Part shown: one piece after another, positions 12,579 through 26,211 of the stretch
Numbering within the stretch: the stretch's first letter is position 1
How the letters are laid out: each line of letters begins with the position of its first letter
Program-made: the position numbers and the translations under genes
The notes under the pieces: generated by a model
What the model saw: only the letters and a program-made list of their open reading frames with translations
Told to the model about the DNA's origin: nothing
The model's database searches: none
Source: Magallana gigas
Taxonomy: Eukaryota
Length of the DNA stretch: 64,000 nt
Reading direction: 5' to 3'
Assembly: GCF_963853765.1 (NCBI RefSeq)
Contig: NC_088859.1
Coordinates: 18,538,001 to 18,602,000, forward strand

Positions 12579-14291
12579 ATGCGTGTCACAGACGAGTCAT
12601 TTATTTCAGAATTGACATACAATGATCAAATGTGCAGCCTATGGAGATTATATGTAAACATGTCAAATTTAAAATAGTAATTCGTAATAATCTTTTTTTT
12701 GCCAATTTACTTAGGGCCGTATTTAACATCATCCTTTATTTGAAATTCTCGAAGGAAATCTTGATATCAGTCTGGCGGAAGATCTTTGTGTTCAGTTATG
12801 ATATAATACCAAAAATAAATTTATGTAATAAATAGTTGATGTACTTCAGTTGTTGAACATACTAGATGAATTCAGCAGGCTCTCGATTTAGTTATGGCAT
12901 TAAACCTAAAAGAGAGTACAATCAAAATATACTGGTACTAGTACTAGTACTTCTTTGAAATTAATTTTTATTTATGTTGAAATCTTAACAAGTTTCAACT
13001 TACGCAGAACAGTAAGTAAAAAATATGAAAATAAGAGGAATACATGAATGTGATATATAACATATCACTAAAATTAACACGATGTAAAAAAAAATCTATT
13101 TCAAAATCTGAAAAACAAACTCTTAAAAAGAATTTAATTTGCATTACGTATACATTAAGAAAGAATATTTTGAATGTCTGCATGGGCGCACGTGTATACA
13201 CGATAATTTTATGCGCTATAATGAGCATGGGTACACCGTCAATTGGTTTAGAATGTCAGTTAGACATTCATACGGGTTTTTCCCTTGTGTATTTCTTTGA
13301 CAAAGTAGCTTGTGGCAAACAAGATAAACTGATTTAATGTGTTCATAAATACTGGTAATTTTATCAACAACAAAAGGCACAGCTAGATTGAGACTTATAC
13401 CAACGTCACACTTTATAAACAAATAATGGAGATTTGTTAACTCAATAAAGAATTCAAACCTCTGTTACTAGAATGAAACTCAATATTTGACTTTCAAATT
13501 TTGATAAAGCATCATCCTTAATGACCGTTTTAGACATTTAAAATGAAAAATATAATATTTGAAAAAAATTGAGCTCAAATCGTGTCTAAGTCTCTTTAAT
13601 CAAGTATAAAATGTGACTTTTGAAAATAATCTATATAATGTGCTAGAATAACTACATCCATACATATTTTTCTTACATTTTTAAATATAGTATTATGAAT
13701 AACTTCAATTTTAATTTTAAGATGATGAATGAAAAATAATGTCAATCCAATATATAAATTTTCCTGTATATAATGGCCGATGTGAGTAAGAAAAATGCAT
13801 ATTCTTATTTCTGTTTAACTGCAAACAACTATTGTTTAAAATTTTGATATAGAAAATTCTGGAGGAGCTTTTAATGAAATGAAAGTTAGAGATTTTTTTT
13901 TTGCTTTTTAAATTGTTAAGGATTAGTCTCCCACCATCGACTTAAAAAAACCCACCGATGCTAAATGTCCGATTCTATCAAGCCAGACTAGATGGAAATT
14001 AATTTATTCCTAGAACAAAATGTCATTAAAAGCGTAGCCAAATAGCTTTCATGCAAACATAAACAATTTCTGTAAATTTAATTGCATAAAAATTATGCCA
14101 CTGCATAGGAAACTGCCGACCCATTTTATATTGCATCACCATAAATACATGTACGAGGTGTTCTGTTTTCATTTATCAAAAATCGGTGGATAGGTACATA
14201 ATCATAAATCAATACCTAGATTTCGAAAATCACTATTGTACCTTTATATCTATTTTTAGTAAAAGGTACTTTCCGTTCAACCACGCATGGG

Positions 14292-14457
14292 TGCTCCTCG
14301 TCTATTTTTTAAATGACGAATGATGTTTGTACATGTATAAGTTTACCATGTATGTTATAGAATTGACTGATCAAGATTGATTTTGTAGCAACAAGGGTAA
14401 ACAGGGTATGCATGTATAGACTTGTCATTCGTCATTTTTAAAAATAGACGTGGAGCG
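14292..14457. repeat. Inverted repeat (about 32-bp arms) upstream of DHRS11 copy B, flanked by a 30-bp direct repeat
   Basis: GCTCCTCGTCTATTTTTTAAATGACGAATGA pairs with TCATTCGTCATTTTTAAAAATAGACGTGGAGC. TTTTTAGTAAAANGTACTTTCCGNTCAACCA occurs at about 14253 and 14491. Confidence 0.7.
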
Positions 14458-14629
14458 TCAAGGGCGAAATAGTATGAAAAGGCGCAATTATTTTTAGTAA
14501 AATGTACTTTCCGCTCAACCAAGGGTGTAGGCAAAACAACAGGAAAAGGTGCCATATCTCTTTGAATTTTGGTCACACATTTTTTCTCACTTTGTGACAA
14601 GGAAATAGTGAAAGGACGTTATTGTCAAC

Positions 14630-17600
14630 ATGGAGAAATGGGTCGGTCGGGTTGCGCTTGTTACCGGAGCCTCGGTGGGGACAGGAGCCGCCATCACACG
14701 AGCTTTGGTCAAACATGGCATGAAAGTTGTGGGCTGTGCAAGAAACGTGCAACAAATTGAGGTAACAAATCGAGTGTTTTATGCAAACGTTGTAATTGAT
14801 GCCGGTGTTGTATAGCAGTTTTTCCCTTATAGTAGCTTTTCCCCCGGAAAACCTACTATATAGTAGCCTTTCCCCCCGGGGGAAAAAGCTACTATAAAGT
14901 AGCTTTCCCCCCATAGTAGAGTTTCTCCCTCACGTTTTTGGTTCAGATTTTATAAAAAATATTTATGAAAATCCAGTCAGGATTAAAATCAATGTTTCTA
15001 CACTCTCATGTTGCATACATGTATATCTGCATTCATCTGTACAGGTTAAGTTTCGTTTTGCCGATTTATTATTTTTATAGACAATGCTGAAAGTTGAACA
15101 TGTGTGTAATGGAATTACACATAGAACTTAATTTAGGTAATTTATTGAAAAAAGTTTTACAAGTTATACACTTATATGCATAATTCTGTGTTCTGAAATT
15201 GTATAAAACGAGAATGCTTTAAGAATTTCTTGATAAATTTATCAGACTGTTTGTCTGTTTGTGAAAATTTTATCCAGGCTAAATCTCTGTTTTAGAGAAA
15301 TTTGGTTTCCGATGTTTCAGAGCCCGATTTTAAAATCCTATTATAATAATTATAGTGCATATTCTTTAGGGTCCAATGTCTCATAAACCAGAGATGACCA
15401 TATCACCATATTTTATCGTGGCAGTGGTTTACCACTTGAAGATGACTCTGAAAATTTCAGCTCTCAGGGAAGAGGCCCTTGAAGTTTCAGGGCCCAATGT
15501 TGAAAACCCCATTATAATGATTGATTAGTGTTCTATAAGTGGTGACCCGAATCTCGAATTCTAGAGATGACCAATTAACCATATTTTCACAGTGATAGTG
15601 GTATACCACTAGTAGATGACACCGAAAATTTAAGCCCCCATGCAGGGTAGGAGCCTTTGTTGTTTTCGAGCCCGATGTTTGAAATCCAATTATAAAGAAC
15701 ATGTATTTTTTAGGGCCCCATATCTCAAAAACTATAGATGACCACATGAACATATTTTTACGGTCATTTAAAAGTAAAAACATCATTTAAAAATACACAA
15801 TCACATATATTTCTTTATTAAAATGATTGAAAATTACGTTTAATTCTGCTGCTTTTTTTTTTAATTAACGAACAAAATTTTTTAAAAAGGTACGCGGGTA
15901 AAATTCATTATTCTTCAAAACATTTAATCAATTCATAAGATGACTAATGATATAATAAATAATTAAATAAAAAAATTAAAAAAAATAAATAAATCAATGA
16001 ACTTTTATTCATAAAAGGAGAAACCGAAAAAAAAAATAACCAACCTAAGCGCATATACGACTTTTTTACTTGTTAGTTGATTAGAAGAACAAGCTTATAT
16101 TTTAAAAAAAAAAGTCAGCTCATCACAATATATGTGTTGGTTGTTGTTTTTTTTTTTTTATTACCCTTGTTTAATTGTTCGAAGAAATAATATGGCACAC
16201 AAGTAAATCTTTATTGCAAAAATATGAAACAAATAGTATAATTTTGTTAGGTAATTGAATCGTATATCTTGATTTATATAGCATCGTTTTCAAAATTGTA
16301 TATTTATAAATCACGTTGCAAACTTAAAAGTGGAAAAATTAGCAAATACTGAGTGACAATATAAACATAAGGTTAGTTCAGGCTCCATTTCACATTTTCC
16401 AAAGTAACCAGCAAAGATACCGACATTGTTCTGGTTGTGAAGACATTTCATTGTTTTTTAAAATGTTTACATCATAATATCTCGCGTTTCGTAGAAATGT
16501 GCTTAAAATATGAATATGCGTAACTTTAAAACGAAATTGTAAACACTAACTTTACACATGCTTTTAATACATAATTAAAATACCAATAAACCATCAAAGT
16601 AAAACTAAAACATTTCAGTTTCTCATCATATCATTGGATCCTGTCTCCCGTTTGATATTTAGAAGAAACATATAACTGTTTTTAAGATCGTCAATTCTAA
16701 CGGTATTAATTTAAAATTGACGAAGGGATTAATACATTTCCACTTTTTATTCCCTTCCTCTACGAAAGTAAGTCAAGATTGGTCAGTTAGTTCCCTGGGA
16801 GAAGCTTATACATTGATGGTAATACATTGGAAAATTAGATTTCCAAACCGGCGTATTTTCACTCAAATGTGTTCTCACGTGTTCATAACGTCGAAGTCAA
16901 AACTGTAGATAAGCACCGATTAGATGAAAAAGATTCGAGGTATTCCGCCGAAATCCGTGTAAAAGGTGTTCCAAAAAGGGGTGAGAACAGGTGAAATAAA
17001 CGATGATGACACATGCATGTTATGAAGGCGCATGCCTTAGTTCATATTTGGGGTTGGAAAACCATGTATTTTATTCTATGTATTAATAAATGCCATAATT
17101 ATCCTTTTTTGTGAGAAATTAATATCATATCAGTTATTGCAAATTATTGTCACGAATGGCCCGCAATAAACATGGCCGGAAAGTAAAAATGGGGGAAAAT
17201 CCACTATATAGTAGGTTTTCCGTGGGGGTAATCTGGCTATAAAAAGGGGGAAAGCCCACTATTTAGTCAGCTTTCCGTGGGGGAAAAACTGCTATATAGC
17301 CATTTTTCCGGGGGGAAGAACTGCTATATAGCCATTTTTCCGGGGGAAAAGATGGCTAGGGGGAAAAGGCACTATATAACACCGGTCGACAGTGGATCAT
17401 GGTTGACCAAGATAAATAATACGAAGCAAGCTCTAAATGTTCTTTACAATGAAAAAAGTATGCATTGCATACTCATGGAAATACATGACGATTGGAGCAA
17501 TAATTTGGGCTATCGGAAAGTCAAACTGCCAAATAATGCAGTATGTAGAAGGCCCATGGACCACAATGCTCACTTGAATTTTATAACAAAAAATCGATCT

Positions 17601-20600
17601 CGTTTATATGTGTATTGGCAGGCACGTAGCAGTGATGGATGGGGGGCGGGGGCAGACTTATTCGAAATCTTGACAAGCAAAAAAAAAACCCCGCAAAACT
17701 ATTAACAGGTTCTTTTCCGTGGGAGGAAGGGGGCTTAGTTACTTTAAACTTCTGTTTTAATGTCAAAGTTGTTAATTTTTTCTGTAATTCGTAAGTGGAT
17801 GAACTCCTTTAAAATTAAATTTTCTATATCTAATTTCAAGCAAAATGTTTCTTGCATAAAAAGGAGGTGCAGGTCCCCCTCACCCTCTTCCTCCGATGCT
17901 GCATGCCTCATTGGCTTCTCTTCACACCCAGAACCGTCGGTGATTGTATGTTTTTTTTAAGCGTAAATAATGCTTATTGAAGGATATACAAGTCAGTTTT
18001 CTATGGAGTGAATGCAAAAACTGCCTTTGTCGTTTCAAGAAAACCCCTGAGTTAATTTTAAAAGTTGCTTCAATTGCCATTTTGTCACTATATTTATCAA
18101 TGAAATCTCAATTTAGAAGTGCTTTTTCATTTTAAATATTAATATGTTAAATTATTAATTTCAGTCTATACGAGATGAGCTGAAGGGTGAAAAGGGTCAG
18201 CTGATTCCAATCAAATGCGATCTCACCAAAGAAGAGGAGATTTTGGCAATGTTTAAAAAAATCCAGAAAGATCTAGGGGGTGTAGATGTGTGCATTAACA
18301 ACGCCGGACTATCACACTGTGCGCCCTTGCTGTCTGGCAGCACTGCTGACTGGAAAAACATGTTAGATGTAAATTTCAATTTTTTCAAATTTTCTCTCCT
18401 TATTTTAAAGCATTAGTTCATGAGTACTGTAATGAAAACATCAAGATTTGTTTTCTTTGAGAGAGAGAGAGAGAGAGATTGAGAGAAAGAGAATCTTTTC
18501 GAAAAATATGACTGAATAGGTTATCAAGATTTTTTAAAAAAATAATGACTGCAGCATGTCAGTCTTCAGCTGTGTTGTATATCTATTGTTACAGTGTATA
18601 GGTTAATAATTAGTAGTTATTTTTAAAGAAATACATTACTGTATTAAAGATTTAGAATTTAAACAATCTACTGTTTTAGGTTAATGTACTTGGTCTTTGC
18701 ATATGTACCAGGGAAGCTTTCCAACAAATGCAGAAAAACAAAGTTGATGATGGTCACATCATTCTAATGAATAGGTAATTGATTTTATATTCATTCAATG
18801 TAGGGAAAGTGAATAAGATTTTTATAACTTATAATTATACATAAAATATTACATGAAACTACACTAGACAATTGTCCTTTATGGTTGTATGGGACGCGTC
18901 CATATTATTACGTGATTCCTATCGAAATAAACCATAAAATGAAGTATAACATTATAAATGTTTTATTTCCCAATGTTGTTACCTAACAGCGTAGTGCAGT
19001 GGGTTAGAGCATGACTTGCAAATCTGTAAGTCATGAGCTCGAATCTCGCTGGGGCTTTTACAAATTTTACCTTTTTGAAAATTTTGGGTCAAAAATTGCA
19101 TAATTTGAAAATTCTAAACCGGTGAAAATATTTTGATTATAATGGGTTTTTTTTAAATTCAACATTAATCTCGACAGGTGTCCCATACCACATTAGCCAC
19201 AGGGAAAAAAAACCATTTCACACCTACACTTGGATACAGTTGGAAGGAATATTTTATATAGTTATATATTGTTATAATCAATATATGTAATGATATTTAT
19301 TTTTAGCTTGTCTGGACACCGTGTCGTTCCAAATGCAGAGGGTCATTTTTACTCTGTCACAAAATGTGCTGTGTCTGCAATTCTGGAGGGTATCAGGAAC
19401 GAACTTCATATGCTGAAATCTCACATAAGGGTTTCGGTGAGAAACTGGGGTTTTTAATTGTACATGTATACTGTCGAATTAAGAGTACATCCGCATGTAC
19501 AGAGATATATACAGATTTTCCTTTCTTTCTTTATGATTTGTAAAATCCATATAGATTCCATGGATTCTGAAACTAAAGAAATGGACTTATGTTTAAATTC
19601 TTTTTGTTCAACCTTTGAATTTTTAATTAGAAGGATAAGTAATTCTAATCTGTATACTAGTATTACCTGCTTTATCATTTAATCAATCATATGGGGTATA
19701 TTTCTGCACATGCAGACTATAAGCCAAGAGATGGCAAAAACAGTTATTTGAAACATGCAATTTGAAAAATTAAGAAGAAGGGAAGAGAATTTATGCAGAA
19801 TATAAGGCAGATAACTCTATTTCTCCTTGATCTTCTTAAATAGTCTGTCAGTCCAGGGATAGTGGCAACAGAATTCCATCAAAGAATGTATAAAAGTCCA
19901 GAAGTTGGGAAGAGAATTTGTAGTCGTATGAAGGTATGTATTGGTAAAATAAACAGTGTTTGAATTAATGATATTTACAGGTTTAAATGAAATGTAATCA
20001 TCCCGTTTTACATTTATAGAGAAAAAAATTGATGAATTCTCTGAAATGTCTTGATTTGCTTTCCAATAAATTGTAAACACATTACATCCCCTCTCCATTT
20101 AATTTGTACATTTTTACTTTTTTTATACAAATAATTTATTTGTTAAAAAAAAGAGAAAGATATAAATCCCAGGTTAATCCATCTTCGCTAGCCAAGGGTT
20201 TACGATCCACTCTGCTCCTCTACAACAGAGTGGATCGTAAACCCTGGGCTAGCGAAGATGAGGTTAATCAAGGTCATTGAAATAAGAAAGGTTCCATATG
20301 TATATTCAAAACATGATTATCATAATGACTGTGTCTTAATTAATTGAAAAATGCAAATTATCATTATGCACAAGAGTCAACCTTGATCAATATTGATACA
20401 GTGACCACTTTAGTACTTGAAGCACAGACTTTTAATTGATTTTTCAGTGTTTGGAAGGAGAGGATTTGGCCAATGCAGTCATTTATGCATTAAGTGCACC
20501 AGCACATGTTCAGGTTAGTGTCCTAATTTGAATATTTAAGTATCTTCTTCTATTTGAAAAACCACACCAGTAATGAATTAACATCACAGTTTTTGCATGA

Positions 20601-20862
20601 ATATCATGCAAAATTTGTAGGATGTTTTAAAGAAATGATGGTTTAAAACATTAGATGTATGATATTCCGATGGAAATCATTTCAAAATCACAGGAAGTTT
20701 TTGCACGAAATGTGTGTGTTACTTTACGTCTCTTTCTCATGCAAAGATTTTACATGAAATTCATGCAATATAACGAAGAAGCATGCATATTAAATATTAC
20801 GTAAAATTTCTTTTTCACAGGTTCATGACATCCTGGTGAGATCAATTGAACAGAAAACGTAA
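14630..20862 (+). CDS. DHRS11: DHRS11-like SDR, copy B, about 252 aa; exons 14630-14761, 18165-18368, 18680-18774, 19307-19436, 19844-19933, 20448-20513, 20821-20862
   Basis: Same exon sizes as copy A (132, 204, 95, 130, 90, 66, 42 nt), GT-AG introns and an open frame. Motifs TGASVGTG, NNAG and YSVTK; ends VHDILVRSIEQKT*. Confidence 0.9.
14802..17385. mobile_element. About 2.6-kb foldback-like TIR element with subterminal repeat arrays in intron 1 of copy B
   Basis: Left end CCGGTGTTGTATAG; reverse complement of the right end CCGGTGTTATATAG. Both ends carry ~30-bp units of the type GGGGGAAAAACTGCTATATAGCCATTTTTCC (14815-14915 and 17190-17375). No TSD identified. Confidence 0.65.
15385..15760. 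repeat. Diverged ~172-bp tandem repeat (2-3 units)
   Basis: GATGACC...CCATATTTT...GTGGT.TACCACT blocks recur at 15393, 15566 and 15737. Confidence 0.6.
17619..17909. mobile_element. MITE with CAGGCACGTAGCA termini
   Basis: Left CAGGCACGTAGCA, right TGCTGCATGCCTC; ATTGG flanks both ends (possible TSD). Confidence 0.6.
18987..19055 (+). mobile_element. tRNA-derived SINE head in intron 3 of copy B
   Basis: A-box-like TAGTGCAGTGGGTTAGAGC and B-box-like GAGCTCGAATCTC. No intact acceptor stem. Absent from the homologous intron of copy A. Confidence 0.55.
19716..19806 (+). pseudogene. Inactivated copy of alternative exon 5a in DHRS11 copy B (pseudo-exon)
   Basis: Homologous to 10767-10856 but 91 nt long (net +1). 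Reads TISQEMAKTVI* (PG changed to QE, early TGA), and the donor is GC instead of GT (tataag|gcagat). Confidence 0.88.
20180..20260. mobile_element. 81-bp hairpin micro-MITE with 9-bp TSD
   Basis: 35-bp arms CATCTTCGCTAGCCAAGGGTTTACGATCCACTCTG and CAGAGTGGATCGTAAACCCTGGGCTAGCGAAGATG (1 mismatch) with an 11-nt loop. AGGTTAATC is duplicated at 20171-20179 and 20261-20269. Confidence 0.92.
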
Positions 20863-21467
20863 TTCAAACTTAACAAAGAGACAAGCAGTTATTTGATTGT
20901 TGACAATATTAATATTATGTAATTTCGGAAATTAATTGTTATTTTTGAAAATTTCTGAACGTACATGACCATGGGGTTTTCCTAATGTATACTCCTATCT
21001 ATTTTGTATAGTATGAATCAGTTTAAGTGCATGGTTCTCTTGAACAGCAGAAACTGTTTTACTTTTTCTCATTACAATAAGTGTATTTCAGTAGTATCAC
21101 CTGTAGTATTTTCTTATTCCCCCGATTCTGCTAAATCTCAGAGGAGTGAAAGGATGATATCCCTAAACATGGAAACGGCTCCTTTTTATATACAATGAAC
21201 TATATACAAAACCAACCATGCTTTTGATAAAACAAGAGTGAATAAGAGTAATAAATGTAAACATCCTTGTTACTGTTGACATCTTTGATAATTTTTTATT
21301 GAATTGATTGATGCATTTTCGATGATTTTGTACATTCTGTAAAGATGAATTTTGTTCTGGTTTGTGACTTATTCAAATAAATAAAATTGAACAGAATGGG
21401 TTGACCTTGGTACAGTAGACGATATGTATTGTACATGAAACAGATCGTTCAATAGTCTTTTACAATC

Positions 21468-21637
21468 CACGTGACTATATATCGTCAAATTCTCACCAAC
21501 CATGGGGAAACTTAGTAATTAGAAAAAATCCGTTGACAATACAACTTACAAATGATTAATTTCATAAATGAAGGTATAGTAGATGGCATGTAAAGTCGCG
21601 TCGAACACGCTTAATATCGAAATATATGTCACGTGAC
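21468..21637. promoter_or_regulatory. E-box cluster downstream of DHRS11 copy B (duplicate of 12399-12578)
   Basis: CACGTGAC at 21468 and GTCACGTGAC at 21628 in homologous context. Confidence 0.4.
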
Positions 21638-22170
21638 ACGCCTCGCACAGACGAGTAACACTATGAAATAAGTTTAGCGCGTTTCTATTTATTTTAGAAG
21701 TTACACAGTGATGTAGAATTTTCTCTTTTTACATACAGATTTTGGTAAAATACATTAAAGTAGAAAAATGCATGTACCTCAGTGTGCTCGTGTGTATTTG
21801 AAATTTCAAATGTGGGGGGAGCTAAAGGTCTACGGGGAGATTGTATGTAATCAGCGTACCCCTACCATAAATATTGATTGTGACATTACTTATTTTTTAA
21901 TCATGAAGAAATATTCTATCTCTCTAATTTTACCACTCTTTTAAAATTCTGTTTGCCACTGTTTCATAATCTTAGAATCTGAAATTATGTCTAAGAAACT
22001 TAAGCAAAATGCATTTATATTTTTATTAAATACCACCAAACTATTAATTTAAAAGTATAATACACAACATAAAATCGCAGCAGATGTAATTATATATAAT
22101 TTACAGTAATATGCCTAGGCTTTGTGCCTTTCTTAATATATGCATGTACGTGTAATTTTTAAACATAGTG

Positions 22171-23067
22171 CTGTAAAACGAGAAAATTTGGCGCAAACAT
22201 ATTTACACAAGTGCCAATACATTCGTGCAATTAAATGTCAATGCTCGCACCTCTTACCTTAAAGAGGTTAAATAAAATTTCTTCTTGTTTGATCAATTGT
22301 TAATTCTGTGTTTACATAAGCACGTGATTTTCAACACGGCAACATAAACTGTTGTTGAGAACAATACACTTTCAAATCGTCAGTGAATAGGTATAAAAAC
22401 ATCATTTACTGGCGATGGGCTATCATTTGTAAACAAGTTTGAGTATCGCACTTTTAATTTAACGTAGCGACTGAGATAACACTAGAAATAAAAGTACATG
22501 CGAGGGAAATCAAATGCTATTTACTCTAATCCACATGCTATATACCTATGCTATTGTATATACAAATAGAGTTGTCCCTTCGGAATAACGTCTTATTATT
22601 CTTATTATTAATCAAGTACTGATAGTACTGAAAAGCGCTAACCCAGCTTCTGTATGTATATAACATATATATGTATATAACATTTCAGATTCTGTATATT
22701 TCCTCATCACTGCGTGGCAGCCCCTGCAATGATGTATGTAAGCCCCCTTCATTAAATTCACAATACCCCGTACATTAGATTCACAATAGCCCGTGCAGTT
22801 ATGTGCATAAACCCCTGAAACTGGTTTAAATGATGTATACTTCTGCTCATAGGGGGCGGTTATTCGATGCATCGGAAGTAGAAGTCTAACGACAATAAAG
22901 CGCTGAGTATGCTTAGCGCTTTAAAAAGGGGCTGAAGTTATCGTTTTGTAACTTGAAATTTCATTCAAATGTAGAAAATCGTTGGTGCACTATTAATTTT
23001 AGGTCTCAAGGGCAGTTGGGCCAAAGGCGCTAAAATTTGTACAGCGCCATACTTTCTCGTTTTACAG
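22171..23067. mobile_element. About 900-bp TA-target TIR element inserted in the 3' end of the TRIM-like CDS
   Basis: Left (TG)|CTGTAAAACGAGAAAATTTGGCGC; reverse complement of the right end (TA)|CTGTAAAACGAGAAAGTATGGCGC. Confidence 0.85.
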
Positions 23068-24731
23068 TATTTAATTTTTTTCACTTTACATGTCTTACAC
23101 TCAGCAACAAAGAGATTGTCTTTGGAATCCATACACAATCCCCATGGACGCTGTATATCACAGTCGTCAATGTAGCGGAGGAACTGTCCGTCCTGCTCAA
23201 AAATATGGATGCGGTTGTTCCAATAGTCTGCTGTCAGTATCCGACTCTGGCTGTCGGTAGTGATACCGACTGGACAAAATGATTCATTGGTAGTAGAAGA
23301 AGGACCAGTGTAGGTAAACCGGAGTTTCCCGGCCTGATTGACCACCACTACTGCCCCGGCTCTATAATCAGCTACGCAGATGTCAAGGTTCTTGTTCTCG
23401 CTGATATACTTGGAGAAATCGCCAAGTGAATAAAGCGGCTCACCATTATCATTTGATTGAATGCTTTGTTTTTCTTTGAAGTCTGGGCTTGAGTAACGCA
23501 CGACTTTTACTTGTTGATAATCATCACTGTCGATGATAACAAGGAAATCGCCGGCAGAAGAAACACATATACTACGAGGTCTCCATCCCTGAAGTTTGGC
23601 AACTCTCTGCAACTTTCTATCTTTCGATATGTTCACTGTTCTTTCATTGTAATCAGTATAAACTGGATACCCACTTGTCACTGCTATGGCCCCTGGTATG
23701 TTTCCTGTTTTGGTTTCAAATGACTTTACTAGTTTTCCCTGGAGATTGACGAGTCTCATGATTTTTTCATTTCCATGCGTCAAGATATAATCATCGCTTA
23801 GACAAGAAACGCCATGTAATTCACTTTGGTTACCATACTCGGTTTTTATTTCTGTAATGATCCGTGGTTCCTCAAGGAGTGGTTTTTCAGAGGGAAAGGT
23901 CTCAGCGTCAGGGGAATCTATTGTGTAACCATCATTATCGCATGTTATACAAAATGCTGACAAAGCACCAAACTGCTGATAAAGCTGTTCTTTATTTATC
24001 TTCTGAGAAGTCAAGCTTGGTAAAGATATTTTGAGTTTAGGAGGCAATCTTCTGAAATCGGCATTCCTGGATTTGTAAGCAAAGACATGAGAGGCATCAT
24101 TGGAATTAAGCAAACCATTCAAATCAGTAATGTTTTGAGTAATTTTAGAAATAGTTTGTGCTATTTCGTCCTCCTGCCTATTTAGAACAGCCAAGTATTT
24201 TGAATCTATTTTATCAAGAGCAGATTTCAGTTTTTTCAAAATGTTATCTATTTCTTTTCGCAAGTCTTCTTCTTGTTTTTCTAAAGCTATTGTCAACTTT
24301 TTAGAGTTGGTATTGATGTTATCTTTCTGAACTGAAATATAAGAGGCAATCTCTTTATATTTTGGATAAATGGATAGCTCAAACTCTTTTAAATCTCTTC
24401 GTATTACTTCTTTCTTATTTTCAATGTGTTTTAAAAACTCAACAAATTCATGGCCTCTATGATCCTCTGAAGAAGCACATGTTGCACATATAGGAATGTC
24501 ACATAGTACGCAATAAAGTTCACATATTTTCGAGGAATGTTTTTGACACTTTGCTGTAGATGCACGCATCTTAAAGGGCACCACCTTGTGGTCTTTAAAT
24601 TCGCTTGAGAGATGTTCTCCCTCACATTCTTTACACAGATGTATGTGACAAATGTCGCAGTACATAGGTGTAACAGGGGTCTTACAGAGATGACACCGTA
24701 ACACATCCTGGGCACAGCGCTTGGGATCCAT
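22965..24731 (-). CDS. Intronless RING-less TRIM-like protein (two B-boxes, coiled coil, NHL-type beta-propeller), 588 aa
   Basis: Starts MDPKRCAQDVLRCHLC (ATG at 24731; the ORF track starts at an upstream TTG). B-boxes CDICHIHLCKECEGEH and CQKHSSKICELYCVLCDIPICATCASSEDHRGH, a heptad-rich middle, and NHL-like repeats (PVGITTDSQSRILTADYWNNRIHI; PWGLCMDSKDNLFVAE). Confidence 0.9.
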   Translation of the reverse strand: MDPKRCAQDVLRCHLCKTPVTPMYCDICHIHLCKECEGEHLSSEFKDHKVVPFKMRASTAKCQKHSSKICELYCVLCDIPICATCASSEDHRGHEFVEFLKHIENKKEVIRRDLKEFELSIYPKYKEIASYISVQKDNINTNSKKLTIALEKQEEDLRKEIDNILKKLKSALDKIDSKYLAVLNRQEDEIAQTISKITQNITDLNGLLNSNDASHVFAYKSRNADFRRLPPKLKISLPSLTSQKINKEQLYQQFGALSAFCITCDNDGYTIDSPDAETFPSEKPLLEEPRIITEIKTEYGNQSELHGVSCLSDDYILTHGNEKIMRLVNLQGKLVKSFETKTGNIPGAIAVTSGYPVYTDYNERTVNISKDRKLQRVAKLQGWRPRSICVSSAGDFLVIIDSDDYQQVKVVRYSSPDFKEKQSIQSNDNGEPLYSLGDFSKYISENKNLDICVADYRAGAVVVVNQAGKLRFTYTGPSSTTNESFCPVGITTDSQSRILTADYWNNRIHIFEQDGQFLRYIDDCDIQRPWGLCMDSKDNLFVAECKTCKVKKIKYCKTRKYGAVQILAPLAQLPLRPKINSAPTIFYI

Positions 24732-26211
24732 TGTCAAACACGTTCATTCATACTTTGAATAAAAAATATAGTTGTAAAAACAGAAATTAATTAATACAGT
24801 TAAATGATCGAAAATTGGTAGGTCTACAAAAATCAGGTTTGAATGACGAAGTAAATAGATAAGGCATGTTTTCTATAGAAAATTAAAAATTAAGATAAAA
24901 TACGCAAAATTCAACGCAGCATTTACAGATATGCAAAACGAAGGTTTGAACAGGTTAAGCACTAGATTGAAAAAGTTAAAAATACGCAGTTTTGTATACA
25001 CACAAGTACCAACATGTATCAACTAAGAATCAATAATCGAAAATTTAAACACTTACTTGCTAATGCAATCCAATCCAATTGCAGATCTTTCAGTTCCACT
25101 TATGATCCAAAGTTAATAACCCTAATTTGATCAGAAATAACGTATAATATGCTAATATAGTTTTATTACAACATATATGGAATAGATTTGGTATCAATAC
25201 TTACAGATAAAAAATTACAAATCTCTTCAACCAAAGATTTATTTTGTGAGGTATCTTCACAGAAGTCTCTTTTAAACACCACGTGATGTGTTAAGGAACG
25301 GGTACTGTGCTATAAAACTGCTGAGGTATTTTTTGCAGATATCTTTGTGTTTCGTTCGTTTTCTTAAGCCAGCTTGAATGTCTCAGCCTTATTGTGTAAT
25401 GAATACAAAACTGCTTTAGAATCAGCATTTTTTTTCTTTTTTTGTTAAAAACTGCATCTGTAGTGTTTAATGGGGTCAAGGACGCAGGCTGTTTGACGTT
25501 TAAAGGGCAAACACCATTCCTATTTCATAATTATATGTATTCTGCGCATGCTCAAGCATAAAAGTAATCTGTAGTAGCAAAACTTCTTAACCATTCTTTA
25601 CTGAGTTTTTAAAAGCATATTATCATATACAGCGCACAAAAGCGTGACCATGTATAGAATATGGTAAGGATCTTGTTTACAAAGAACTGGGAACTCTTCA
25701 TCTGAACAGTGTTTCCCTTGTAACTATATATACCAGCAAATAAAAGATGCACTACAAAGAATAGAGCTGTCGGCTGTGTGATGTGATTGTAGAAATTTTT
25801 TAATCCAATTGTAGAAATCCTAGACTTCCTTATGTTGGCCTGCTATGGGTAAATATATAAACAAGATAATATTGTATCAAAAAAAGAAACATCATGCAAA
25901 CTAACATTTAACAGCAAAATTTTAAATCAAAACAGAATAACAAATTAACATAATTTGTAGATTGAAAGGTTGATTGGTTGAGTGGTTTACATTTAATATC
26001 ATTTTGGACTTTTCTAAAGCCTCTATATTATCTTTAAGAGTAACAGAGGTATACGTAAAAACTTTGTCAAATAGTTAAGAAACATAAAATCATGGTAAAA
26101 ATGATAATTATATAAATTAATGTACAAATTTGGACATATTCAATCCTGTTGTCTCCAGATCATAGTATACAATTGTTTTGGCGTTACCAACATCTGATGG
26201 TCTAGGAATTA

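What the first reader, a model, noticed from the sequence alone, without database searches (positions are those of the whole stretch)
22156..23075. Transposon inserted just before the stop gives the TRIM-like protein a new 33-aa C-terminus
The ORF reads ...KKIK-Y and then runs into the TIR: CKTRKYGAVQILAPLAQLPLRPKINSAPTIFYI*. Removing 22171-23067 plus one target copy (now CA, originally TA) restores AAA TAC TAT GTT TAA, that is KYYV*, a short ending like that of related B-box/NHL proteins. The insertion therefore replaced the last two residues of the final propeller strand, added a TE-encoded tail, and displaced the 3' UTR by about 900 nt while leaving the ORF intact.
Basis: seen in the sequence. 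Interest (0 to 1): 0.7.

Follow-up and report, generated by a model that had tools for sequence, protein, structure and literature searches.

The report
Transposon-made tail on oyster NHL protein
In the Pacific oyster, an old non-autonomous cut-and-paste transposon sits eight bases before the stop codon of a B-box/NHL gene and swaps its last two residues for a 33-residue, probably floppy, tail; the event is real and cleanly reconstructed, but it is an ordinary kind of event with no sign yet that the tail does anything.

Summary
Window 22171-23067 is an 897-bp element with 24-nt inverted ends. It belongs to a roughly 930-bp family with at least 125 copies in this genome (Magallana gigas). Other copies are flanked TA/TA, as Tc1/mariner-type elements are.

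It lies inside the third-last codon of a single-exon B-box/coiled-coil/NHL gene (minus strand, 588 aa). The two closest paralogues (83-84% aa) carry the exact empty site and end ...KIQYYV*. Of 69 family proteins, 66 have 1-4 residues after the conserved Tyr (three lacked the motif); this one has 33.

The insertion is old. The same tail is in two other C. gigas RefSeq models and in the C. angulata orthologue. The copy is 18-23% diverged from its family and holds a second repeat.

Since the gigas/angulata split the gene shows omega about 0.29. The tail is no more conserved than the rest of the element, and AlphaFold2 predicts it disordered (pLDDT 27-28). The same frame is open in 22 of 30 other copies, so the tail is a by-product of the element's end.

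Verdict: a tolerated insertion, probably near neutral; a new member of a known kind.

The parts
22965..24731 (-). Whole present coding sequence with stop: a single exon of 588 codons encoding B-box, coiled coil, NHL propeller and the element-encoded tail
   Evidence: ORF list. Pfam finds NHL at E 2e-14 and B-box at E 1e-7. The exact protein is on record and 97-99% identical to RefSeq XP_019924668.1/.2.
23070..24731 (-). Host-derived part of the coding sequence (residues 1-554, up to ...KVKKIK)
   Evidence: 88.4-88.6% nt identity to paralogues L062/L063 over window 24778->23066. AF2 places the propeller at 290-554 with pLDDT about 90.
23068..23069 (.). Gene-side copy of the TA target duplication. 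With the first base of the element (23067) it forms the retained Tyr codon TAC.
   Evidence: Read directly. TA flanks in the family.
22171..23067 (.). 897-bp non-autonomous TA-target (Tc1/mariner-type) element, a diverged and chimeric copy
   Evidence: Inverted repeat. Family of at least 125 candidate copies of about 930 bp. 77-82% identity to other copies, which are 93-95% identical to each other.
23044..23067 (.). Gene-side terminal inverted repeat, read as codons C-K-T-R-K-Y-G-A of the tail
22171..22194 (.). Far-side terminal inverted repeat
22965..23066 (-). 33 element-encoded codons plus the new TGA stop (22965-22967)
   Evidence: The same frame gives a near-identical peptide of 33-35 residues in 22 of 30 other copies. 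Predicted disordered, pLDDT 27-28.
22169..22170 (.). Far-side copy of the target duplication, now TG (CA on the gene strand): one transition away from TA
22159..22168 (-). Stranded remnant of the old ending: C TAT GTT TAA, with the old stop at 22159-22161
   Evidence: Matches the ends of paralogues L062/L063
21932..22158 (-). Ancestral 3' flank and UTR, still 76-78% identical to the paralogues. Its AATAAA lies at 22022-22027, 132 nt after the old stop and 938 nt after the new one.
   Evidence: The AATAAA region is also kept in C. angulata.
22610..22928 (.). A second, unrelated high-copy repeat (about 320-340 bp) inside the element, which replaces the family's usual middle. It lies in the new 3' UTR, not in the tail.
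   Evidence: At least 764 candidate copies at 88-94% identity. The family middle is unrelated. The junction 22490-22625 is unique in the genome. The repeat is also present in C. angulata.
22453..22458 (-). ATTAAA inside the element, a possible alternative polyadenylation signal 507 nt after the new stop
   Evidence: sequence scan only; use not tested

Best explanation
SHOWN. A roughly 0.9-kb non-autonomous DNA transposon of a TA-target, Tc1/mariner-type family inserted at the TA of the codon pair TAC-TAT, eight bases before the stop of a single-exon B-box/coiled-coil/NHL gene. The Tyr codon is rebuilt from TA plus the first base of the element. Translation then runs through the terminal inverted repeat and the subterminal sequence for 33 codons to a TGA. 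The old ending (Y-V-stop) and the old 3' UTR now lie about 900 nt downstream. The insertion came after this gene split from its closest paralogues on chromosome 4, which have the empty site (dS about 0.3). It came before Magallana gigas and C. angulata split, since both have the tail (dS 0.024). A second repeat later entered or replaced the middle of the element, and C. angulata then lost the far end.

INFERRED. The tail is an unstructured appendage at the end of the last propeller strand. The open frame was supplied ready-made by the element's end. The gene has stayed under purifying selection with the tail attached. The tail is therefore tolerated and most likely near neutral. Its main possible effects are a slightly frayed closure of the propeller and a 3' UTR of about 960 nt in place of one of about 150 nt.
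For: Element and family:
- Inverted repeat of 24 nt, 22 of 24 complementary.
- At least 125 candidate copies for each arm.
- TA/TA flanks in 28 of 30 copies.
- 152 TA+terminus matches in the genome against 0 for the control.

Empty site:
- The 24 nearest paralogues examined stop two or three codons after KIQ/KIK, and L062/L063 read the reconstructed sequence.
- The nucleotide alignment is split exactly at the element, and 240 nt of 3' flank remain homologous.
- Of 69 family proteins, 66 have 1-4 residues after the conserved Tyr (three lacked the motif), against 33 here.
- A word search with the tail alone finds only the gene's own cluster.

Age:
- The same tail is in XP_019924668.1, XP_019924668.2 and C. 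angulata XP_052690430.1.
- The angulata locus is collinear through the gene, the near terminus and the nested repeat.
- The copy is 77-82% identical to its family, whose other copies are 93-95% alike.
- dS to the paralogues is 0.30-0.32.

Selection:
- Core omega is 0.29 (Nd 9, Sd 8; P = 0.014 against neutrality).
- The tail has 1 change in 103 nt, not different from the rest of the element (P = 0.31).

Tail as a by-product: the same frame is open for 33-35 codons, with nearly the same peptide, in 22 of 30 other copies.

Structure:
- Tail pLDDT is 27-28 with no secondary structure, and the last strand is 549-554.
- In the paralogue the last strand is 548-555.
- The human TRIM3 NHL chain ends two residues after the residue aligned to Tyr555.

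Presence in other samples: 18 runs hold at least half of the words of 21900-23500 (the 20 holders overall come from 11 studies). Four of them are RNA-Seq runs at 0.61-0.77. That share cannot be reached without part of the element, which makes up 56% of the stretch.
Against: No read-level evidence. RNA-run contigs can carry DNA or pre-mRNA. RefSeq models are predictions.

Near-neutrality is an inference from small counts (17 substitutions). Within C. gigas the protein is rather polymorphic: 97% identity between two alleles, and one Leu/Ser change in the tail. This fits either relaxed constraint or the variability typical of this family.

No autonomous partner with a transposase was found for the element family, so the superfamily assignment rests on the TA duplication and the inverted ends.
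Confidence: 0.85

Rival explanations
1. The tail, or the element-derived 3' UTR, has been co-opted. It would give this one family member a new property, such as altered turnover, a docking peptide or new post-transcriptional control, and would be kept by selection.
For: The tail has stayed open, with no amino-acid change between the window's C. gigas and C. angulata. The gene itself is constrained, with omega 0.29. The end of this family is otherwise very uniform at 1-4 residues, so a 33-residue tail is a large departure that was nevertheless retained.
Against: The tail is no better conserved than the non-coding remainder of the element (P = 0.31). A Leu/Ser polymorphism segregates in it. It is predicted disordered. 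The open frame pre-exists in most copies of the element. No other annotated protein uses it.
Confidence: 0.1
2. The gene is a dispersed duplicate on its way to becoming a pseudogene. The insertion damaged it, and the open frame is only not yet broken.
For: It sits alone at C7:18.56 Mb, far from the large family arrays on C4, C9 and C7:51.7-52.8 Mb. Two C. gigas alleles differ at about 3% of residues. The predicted last strand is shortened and less confident, with pLDDT 71 against 89.
Against: The frame is intact over 584-588 codons in four independent sequences of two species. Omega is 0.29 since the species split, significantly below 1. It is the same as the omega of 0.24-0.28 to the paralogues. 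RNA-Seq runs hold the sequence.
Confidence: 0.1
3. The tail is never made: transcripts are polyadenylated or spliced so that the element-encoded codons are skipped.
For: Not excluded, since no reads could be laid. An early gene model (K1R708) ended differently.
Against: The tail starts at the first base of the element, directly in frame with a single-exon ORF. No AATAAA or ATTAAA lies between 23067 and the new stop, and the first such signal comes 507 nt after it. Three RefSeq annotation rounds chose the read-through model. RNA-run contigs hold a share of words that requires part of the element.
Confidence: 0.04
4. There was no insertion: either the long ending is ancestral and the relatives lost it, or the inverted repeat is a chance match or an assembly error.
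For: None found.
Against: The stretch belongs to a dispersed repeat family with the same termini and TA flanks. The paralogues show the exact empty site with continuing 3' homology. Independent assemblies hold it, as do the runs that carry the stretch, which come from 11 studies.
Confidence: 0.01

Closest known systems
Non-autonomous Tc1/mariner-type elements (MITE-like, Stowaway-type) in bivalve genomes
   Same: TA target duplication, short terminal inverted repeats, no coding capacity, and more than a hundred dispersed copies. DNA elements and their non-autonomous derivatives are reported as abundant in bivalves (PMC10294476).
   Different: At about 930 bp it is longer than a classical MITE. 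No transposase-bearing partner was identified here. This copy is a unique chimera with a second repeat inside it.
Transposable-element exonisation that replaces a protein's C-terminus (own knowledge: Alu or MIR exonisation; SETMAR, where a mariner copy downstream of a SET gene became its C-terminal part)
   Same: Host reading frame continues into element sequence, giving a lineage-specific new C-terminus that is kept for a long time.
   Different: No splicing is needed here. The element sits directly in the last coding exon, two codons before the stop. What is translated is the non-coding terminal repeat, not a transposase domain. No function is shown for the added part.
TRIM2/TRIM3/TRIM71/Brat NHL-propeller proteins
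   Same: B-box, long coiled coil and a six-bladed NHL propeller. The best solved matches are the TRIM2 and TRIM3 NHL domains at E 4e-20. The normal end lies two residues after the conserved Tyr, as in TRIM3.
   Different: No RING domain was detected. The gene belongs to a lineage-specific expansion of more than 130 single-exon genes in Magallana, with no orthologue above about 65% identity outside C. gigas and C. angulata.

Membership tests
Tc1/mariner-superfamily non-autonomous DNA transposon | TA target-site duplication | tested here: met
   All 30 other copies have TA on one side and 28 of 30 on both. This copy has TA on the gene side and TG on the far side, one transition away. The paralogue empty site has a single TA there.
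Tc1/mariner-superfamily non-autonomous DNA transposon | Terminal inverted repeats | tested here: met
   24 nt, 22 of 24 complementary. The termini are conserved across the family.
Tc1/mariner-superfamily non-autonomous DNA transposon | Dispersed multi-copy family without a transposase gene | tested here: met
   125-127 candidate copies for each arm and 152 TA+terminus matches against 0 for the control. The 897 bp hold only one ORF of 60 aa or more (86 aa, inside the nested repeat).
Tc1/mariner-superfamily non-autonomous DNA transposon | An autonomous relative with the same termini and a DD(E/D) transposase | tested here: inconclusive
   Terminus pairs 2.1-2.3 kb apart exist, for example C1:11908261-11910605 and C2:34782936-34785248, but could not be fetched. 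None overlaps a listed DDE_3 match, though only 150 of 428 candidates were scored. A 1.8-kb copy (L044) has no transposase ORF.
TRIM-NHL (RING/B-box/coiled-coil/NHL) proteins | RING finger | tested here: not met
   Pfam reports no RING. The N-terminal Cys/His cluster (residues 13-48) is conserved in the family but was not assigned to any domain. The gene is therefore TRIM-like, not a full tripartite-motif protein.
TRIM-NHL (RING/B-box/coiled-coil/NHL) proteins | B-box zinc finger | tested here: met
   PF00643, E 1e-7, residues 60-98
TRIM-NHL (RING/B-box/coiled-coil/NHL) proteins | Coiled coil | tested here: met
   The AF2 model has one long helix at 99-208; this is a model only.
TRIM-NHL (RING/B-box/coiled-coil/NHL) proteins | C-terminal NHL beta-propeller | tested here: met
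   PF01436, E 2e-14. TRIM2/TRIM3 NHL chains at E 4e-20. The AF2 model shows strands 290-554 at pLDDT about 90.
Element-derived C-terminal replacement (exonisation at the 3' end) | Host frame continues in frame into element sequence, and relatives show the empty site | tested here: met
Element-derived C-terminal replacement (exonisation at the 3' end) | The chimeric mRNA exists | tested here: inconclusive
   Four RNA-Seq runs hold 0.61-0.77 of the words of 21900-23500.
Element-derived C-terminal replacement (exonisation at the 3' end) | The chimeric protein exists | not testable with these tools
   Needs proteomics.

The most novel reading that the evidence does not exclude
The element-encoded tail and/or the 0.8-kb element-derived 3' UTR has been co-opted. 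It would set this solitary family member apart from its more than 130 short-ended relatives, for instance by changing its turnover, partner binding or mRNA regulation. That would make it a dated, testable case of a MITE-like element creating a functional protein end in a candidate immune-receptor family.
Probability: 0.1. Interest if true: 0.55.

Novelty: new member of a known kind. Interest (0 to 1): 0.3.

Why it matters
This is a textbook-clean, datable example of how a small DNA transposon can rewrite a protein's end without breaking the gene. The empty site is preserved in the paralogues, and the old stop and 3' UTR are still readable downstream. The insertion is bracketed between a gene duplication (dS about 0.3) and a species split (dS 0.024).

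It lies in a family that other studies link to oyster antiviral responses (TRIM genes among those differentially expressed in resistant oysters, PMC6971885). Earlier notes of this scan describe the same family as having a hypervariable propeller face.

It shows that the otherwise uniform C-terminus of these propellers tolerates a 33-residue appendage. Practically, it warns annotators that the last 33 residues of XP_019924668 and XP_052690430 are transposon sequence. By itself it does not open a new question.

Tried and rejected
1. Read laying. As a result there is no depth, splice, strand or poly(A) evidence. After those places were sent to no search tool and were masked with N in the scripts that ran local BLAST or pattern scans. 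Two later local scripts still read them unmasked: a pairwise alignment, which did not print them, and a pairwise identity comparison of element arms.

2. Autonomous partner of the element. The DDE_3 scan listed no match inside them. The longer copy L044 has no transposase ORF.

3. DNA of the two other C. gigas alleles. The exact-protein look-ups for P0002 and P0005 found no record.

4. Rfam scan of 22686-23100 for an RNA-derived origin of the nested repeat: no match.

5. Literature. No paper mentions XP_019924668, and a search on oyster TRIM/NHL expansion gave nothing specific.

6. Selection on the tail was tested and not found.

8. I built no consensus of the element; copies were compared one by one.
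Full report
WHAT IS THERE

The window is G000:C7:18538001-18602000 of a 564-Mb, ten-chromosome assembly. Exact look-up of the encoded protein places it in Magallana (Crassostrea) gigas.

On the minus strand an ORF runs 24737->22965. Its real ATG is at 24731, giving 588 residues in one exon. Pfam finds a B-box (60-98) and NHL repeats but no RING. An AlphaFold2 model built on 70 family members shows the following:
- zinc-finger modules at the N-terminus;
- one long helix, 99-208;
- a poorly predicted linker, 227-285;
- a confident beta-propeller, 290-554, at pLDDT about 90.

The best solved relatives are the NHL domains of TRIM2 and TRIM3.

THE ELEMENT

Window 22171-23067 (897 bp) is bounded by a 24-nt inverted repeat with 22 of 24 positions complementary. 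Both arms belong to a dispersed family, with 127 and 125 candidate copies in the genome for the left and right arms.

Thirty full copies of about 900-940 bp share the termini CTGTAAAACGAG...CTCGTTTTACAG. All 30 have TA on one side and 28 of 30 have it on both. TA plus the terminus occurs 152 times in the genome, against 0 for a reversed control. A TA duplication, short inverted ends, no coding capacity and more than 100 copies together describe a non-autonomous Tc1/mariner-type element. I could not find its autonomous partner, so the superfamily assignment rests on these structural features.

The window copy is unusual in two ways:
- It is 77-82% identical to the other copies, which are 93-95% identical to one another. 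It is therefore either old or from an older subfamily.
- Only its ends are homologous to the family, roughly 22171-22520 and 22929-23067. Its middle holds a different repeat of about 320 bp (22610-22928), with at least 764 candidate copies at 88-94% identity.

The junction 22490-22625 is unique in the genome. The chimera therefore has no second copy and probably arose at this locus.

THE INSERTION SITE

On the gene strand the sequence reads ...AAA ATT AAA TA | C TGT AAA ACG ... (element) ... | CA C TAT GTT TAA.

The two closest paralogues (C4:50557328 and C4:50599664, 83-84% aa) read AAA ATT CAA TAC TAT GTT TAG, that is ...KIQYYV*.

At nucleotide level the window aligns to them from 24778 to 23066 and again from 22169 to 21932. 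The two blocks abut in the paralogue at positions 1494/1496. That is an exact empty site with a single TA, and about 240 nt of 3' flank are still recognisable beyond the element.

All 24 nearest paralogues stop two or three codons after KIQ/KIK. Of 69 annotated family proteins, 66 have 1-4 residues after the conserved Tyr (three lacked the motif); this protein has 33. A word search restricted to the tail finds only the gene's own 90% cluster among 5.8 billion proteins.

That includes the far-side target copy having mutated from TA to CA on the gene strand.

AGE

The same tail is present in XP_019924668.1 and XP_019924668.2, which are two other C. gigas annotation rounds that differ from the window protein at 1-3% of residues and carry a Leu/Ser difference in the tail. 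It is also present in C. angulata XP_052690430.1.

The C. angulata locus (L087) is collinear with the window from 28720 down to 22523, at 96.6% identity. That span covers the gene, the near terminus, the tail and the nested repeat. After it, 238 bp of unrelated sequence replace the far 350 bp of the element and the old stop. Collinearity resumes at the AATAAA region, 22027->21878.

The insertion and the nested repeat therefore predate the gigas/angulata split (dS 0.024). They postdate the split from the chromosome-4 paralogues (dS 0.30-0.32). The element's own divergence fits that bracket.

No orthologue above about 65% identity exists outside these two species in the protein collection.

In public data, 18 runs hold at least half of the sampled words of 21900-23500 (the 20 holders overall come from 11 studies). 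The element makes up 56% of that stretch.

CONSEQUENCES

Protein. Tyr555 is kept, the residues Y-V are lost, and 33 residues are added.

In the paralogue model the last strand runs 548-555 of 556 residues at pLDDT 89, and the N-terminal strand of the propeller runs 284-295. In this protein the last strand ends at 554, the N-terminal strand is 290-296, the 551-560 block drops to pLDDT 71, and residues 559-588 have pLDDT 27-28 with no secondary structure. These are models, not measurements. They suggest a slightly frayed closure of the propeller plus a disordered appendage.

The tail is not something that evolved after insertion. Read in the same frame, 22 of 30 other copies give an open 33-35-codon frame with almost the same peptide.

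Messenger RNA. After the new stop the only signals found are ATTAAA at 22458 (inside the element) and the ancestral AATAAA at 22027. The 3' UTR would therefore be about 530 nt or about 960 nt, instead of about 150 nt.

Four RNA-Seq runs hold 0.61-0.77 of the words of the stretch, which cannot be reached without element sequence. This fits read-through transcription but does not prove a continuous mature transcript.

SELECTION

Between the window and C. angulata the host-derived core has 9 non-synonymous and 8 synonymous changes. Omega is 0.29, with P = 0.014 against neutrality. That resembles the omega of 0.24-0.28 to the paralogues.

The gene has thus stayed constrained with the tail attached.

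The tail has one synonymous change in 103 nt. This is not significantly fewer than the 12 in 355 found in the non-coding part of the element (P = 0.31).

I therefore read the tail as tolerated rather than selected. The counts are small.

WHAT COULD NOT BE DONE

Transcript ends, splicing and expression level are therefore untested.

Those places were sent to no search tool afterwards. They were masked in the later scripts that ran local BLAST or pattern scans. Two later local scripts still read them unmasked: a pairwise alignment that did not print them and a pairwise identity comparison of element arms.

Further genome DNA could not be fetched.

COMPARISON AND VERDICT

Transposon sequence read as a new protein end is a known kind of event (own knowledge: Alu/MIR exonisation, SETMAR). 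Abundant non-autonomous DNA elements are known in bivalves (PMC10294476). TRIM-like genes are prominent among oyster immune-response genes (PMC6971885). Earlier notes of this scan (s1-403220, s1-399379; not tested here) describe hypervariable propeller faces in this family.

The present case is a clean, dated new instance, with no evidence of function for the added part. The protein with its tail is already in RefSeq. What this work adds is the transposon origin of its last 33 residues, the empty-site proof and the dating.

Noticed in passing
window 22610-22928: A repeat of about 320-340 bp with at least 764 candidate copies in the genome (88-94% identity) sits inside the element. It ends in a 12-nt hairpin (22896-22907 / 22912-22923) followed by an A-rich stretch. 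It carries a 23-bp tandem duplication (22743-22788). Five copies (L002-L006) have unique flanks. In L007-L020 the repeat is embedded in a longer repeated unit. It is unclassified, and Rfam finds nothing in 22686-23100.
   Followed up: partly
L087:6215-6452 (C. angulata, GCA_025612915.2 CM046785.1): In C. angulata the far 350 bp of the element, its far terminal repeat and the old stop remnant (window 22028-22522) are replaced by 238 bp of unrelated sequence. Downstream of L087:6603 nothing aligns to window 14000-21878. The region 3' of the gene therefore differs structurally between the two species.
   Followed up: partly
window about 22822-22823: The window's nested repeat lacks 12 bp (GTTCCCTAACCA on the + strand) that are present in C. 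angulata and in nearly all other copies. This is a small deletion specific to this C. gigas haplotype or lineage.
   Followed up: no
G000 C1:11908261-11910605, C1:11962737-11965080, C2:34782936-34785248, C1:5937417-5939555: Inward-facing pairs of the same TA+terminus lie 2.1-2.3 kb apart. They may be longer or autonomous relatives of the element family. They could not be fetched.
   Followed up: partly
L054 (C4:44314817) and L056 (C3:43245232): Two copies of the element on different chromosomes have identical 12-nt flanks on both sides and identical length (909 bp). This points to a duplicated segment rather than two independent insertions.
   Followed up: no
G000 C4:49-56 Mb, C9:25-30 and 46-48 Mb, C7:51.7-52.8 Mb: The B-box/NHL family forms very large arrays: 131 scored matches, all with E at most 1e-105, out of 1965 candidates. 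The gene in the window lies alone at C7:18.56 Mb, and its two nearest relatives are on C4:50.56-50.60 Mb. It is therefore a dispersed duplicate of about 3 kb (homology window 21932-24950).
   Followed up: partly
protein P0004 (UniRef K1R708, 244 aa): The 2012 gene model of this locus starts at residue 325 and ends with a different, shorter C-terminus after ...VAEC. It looks like a mis-predicted splice out of the last strand rather than a real isoform.
   Followed up: no
window 22965-24731: Two C. gigas RefSeq versions of this protein differ from the window allele at about 1% and 3% of residues, and the differences are spread over the coiled coil and the propeller. That is high amino-acid polymorphism within a species.
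   Followed up: no
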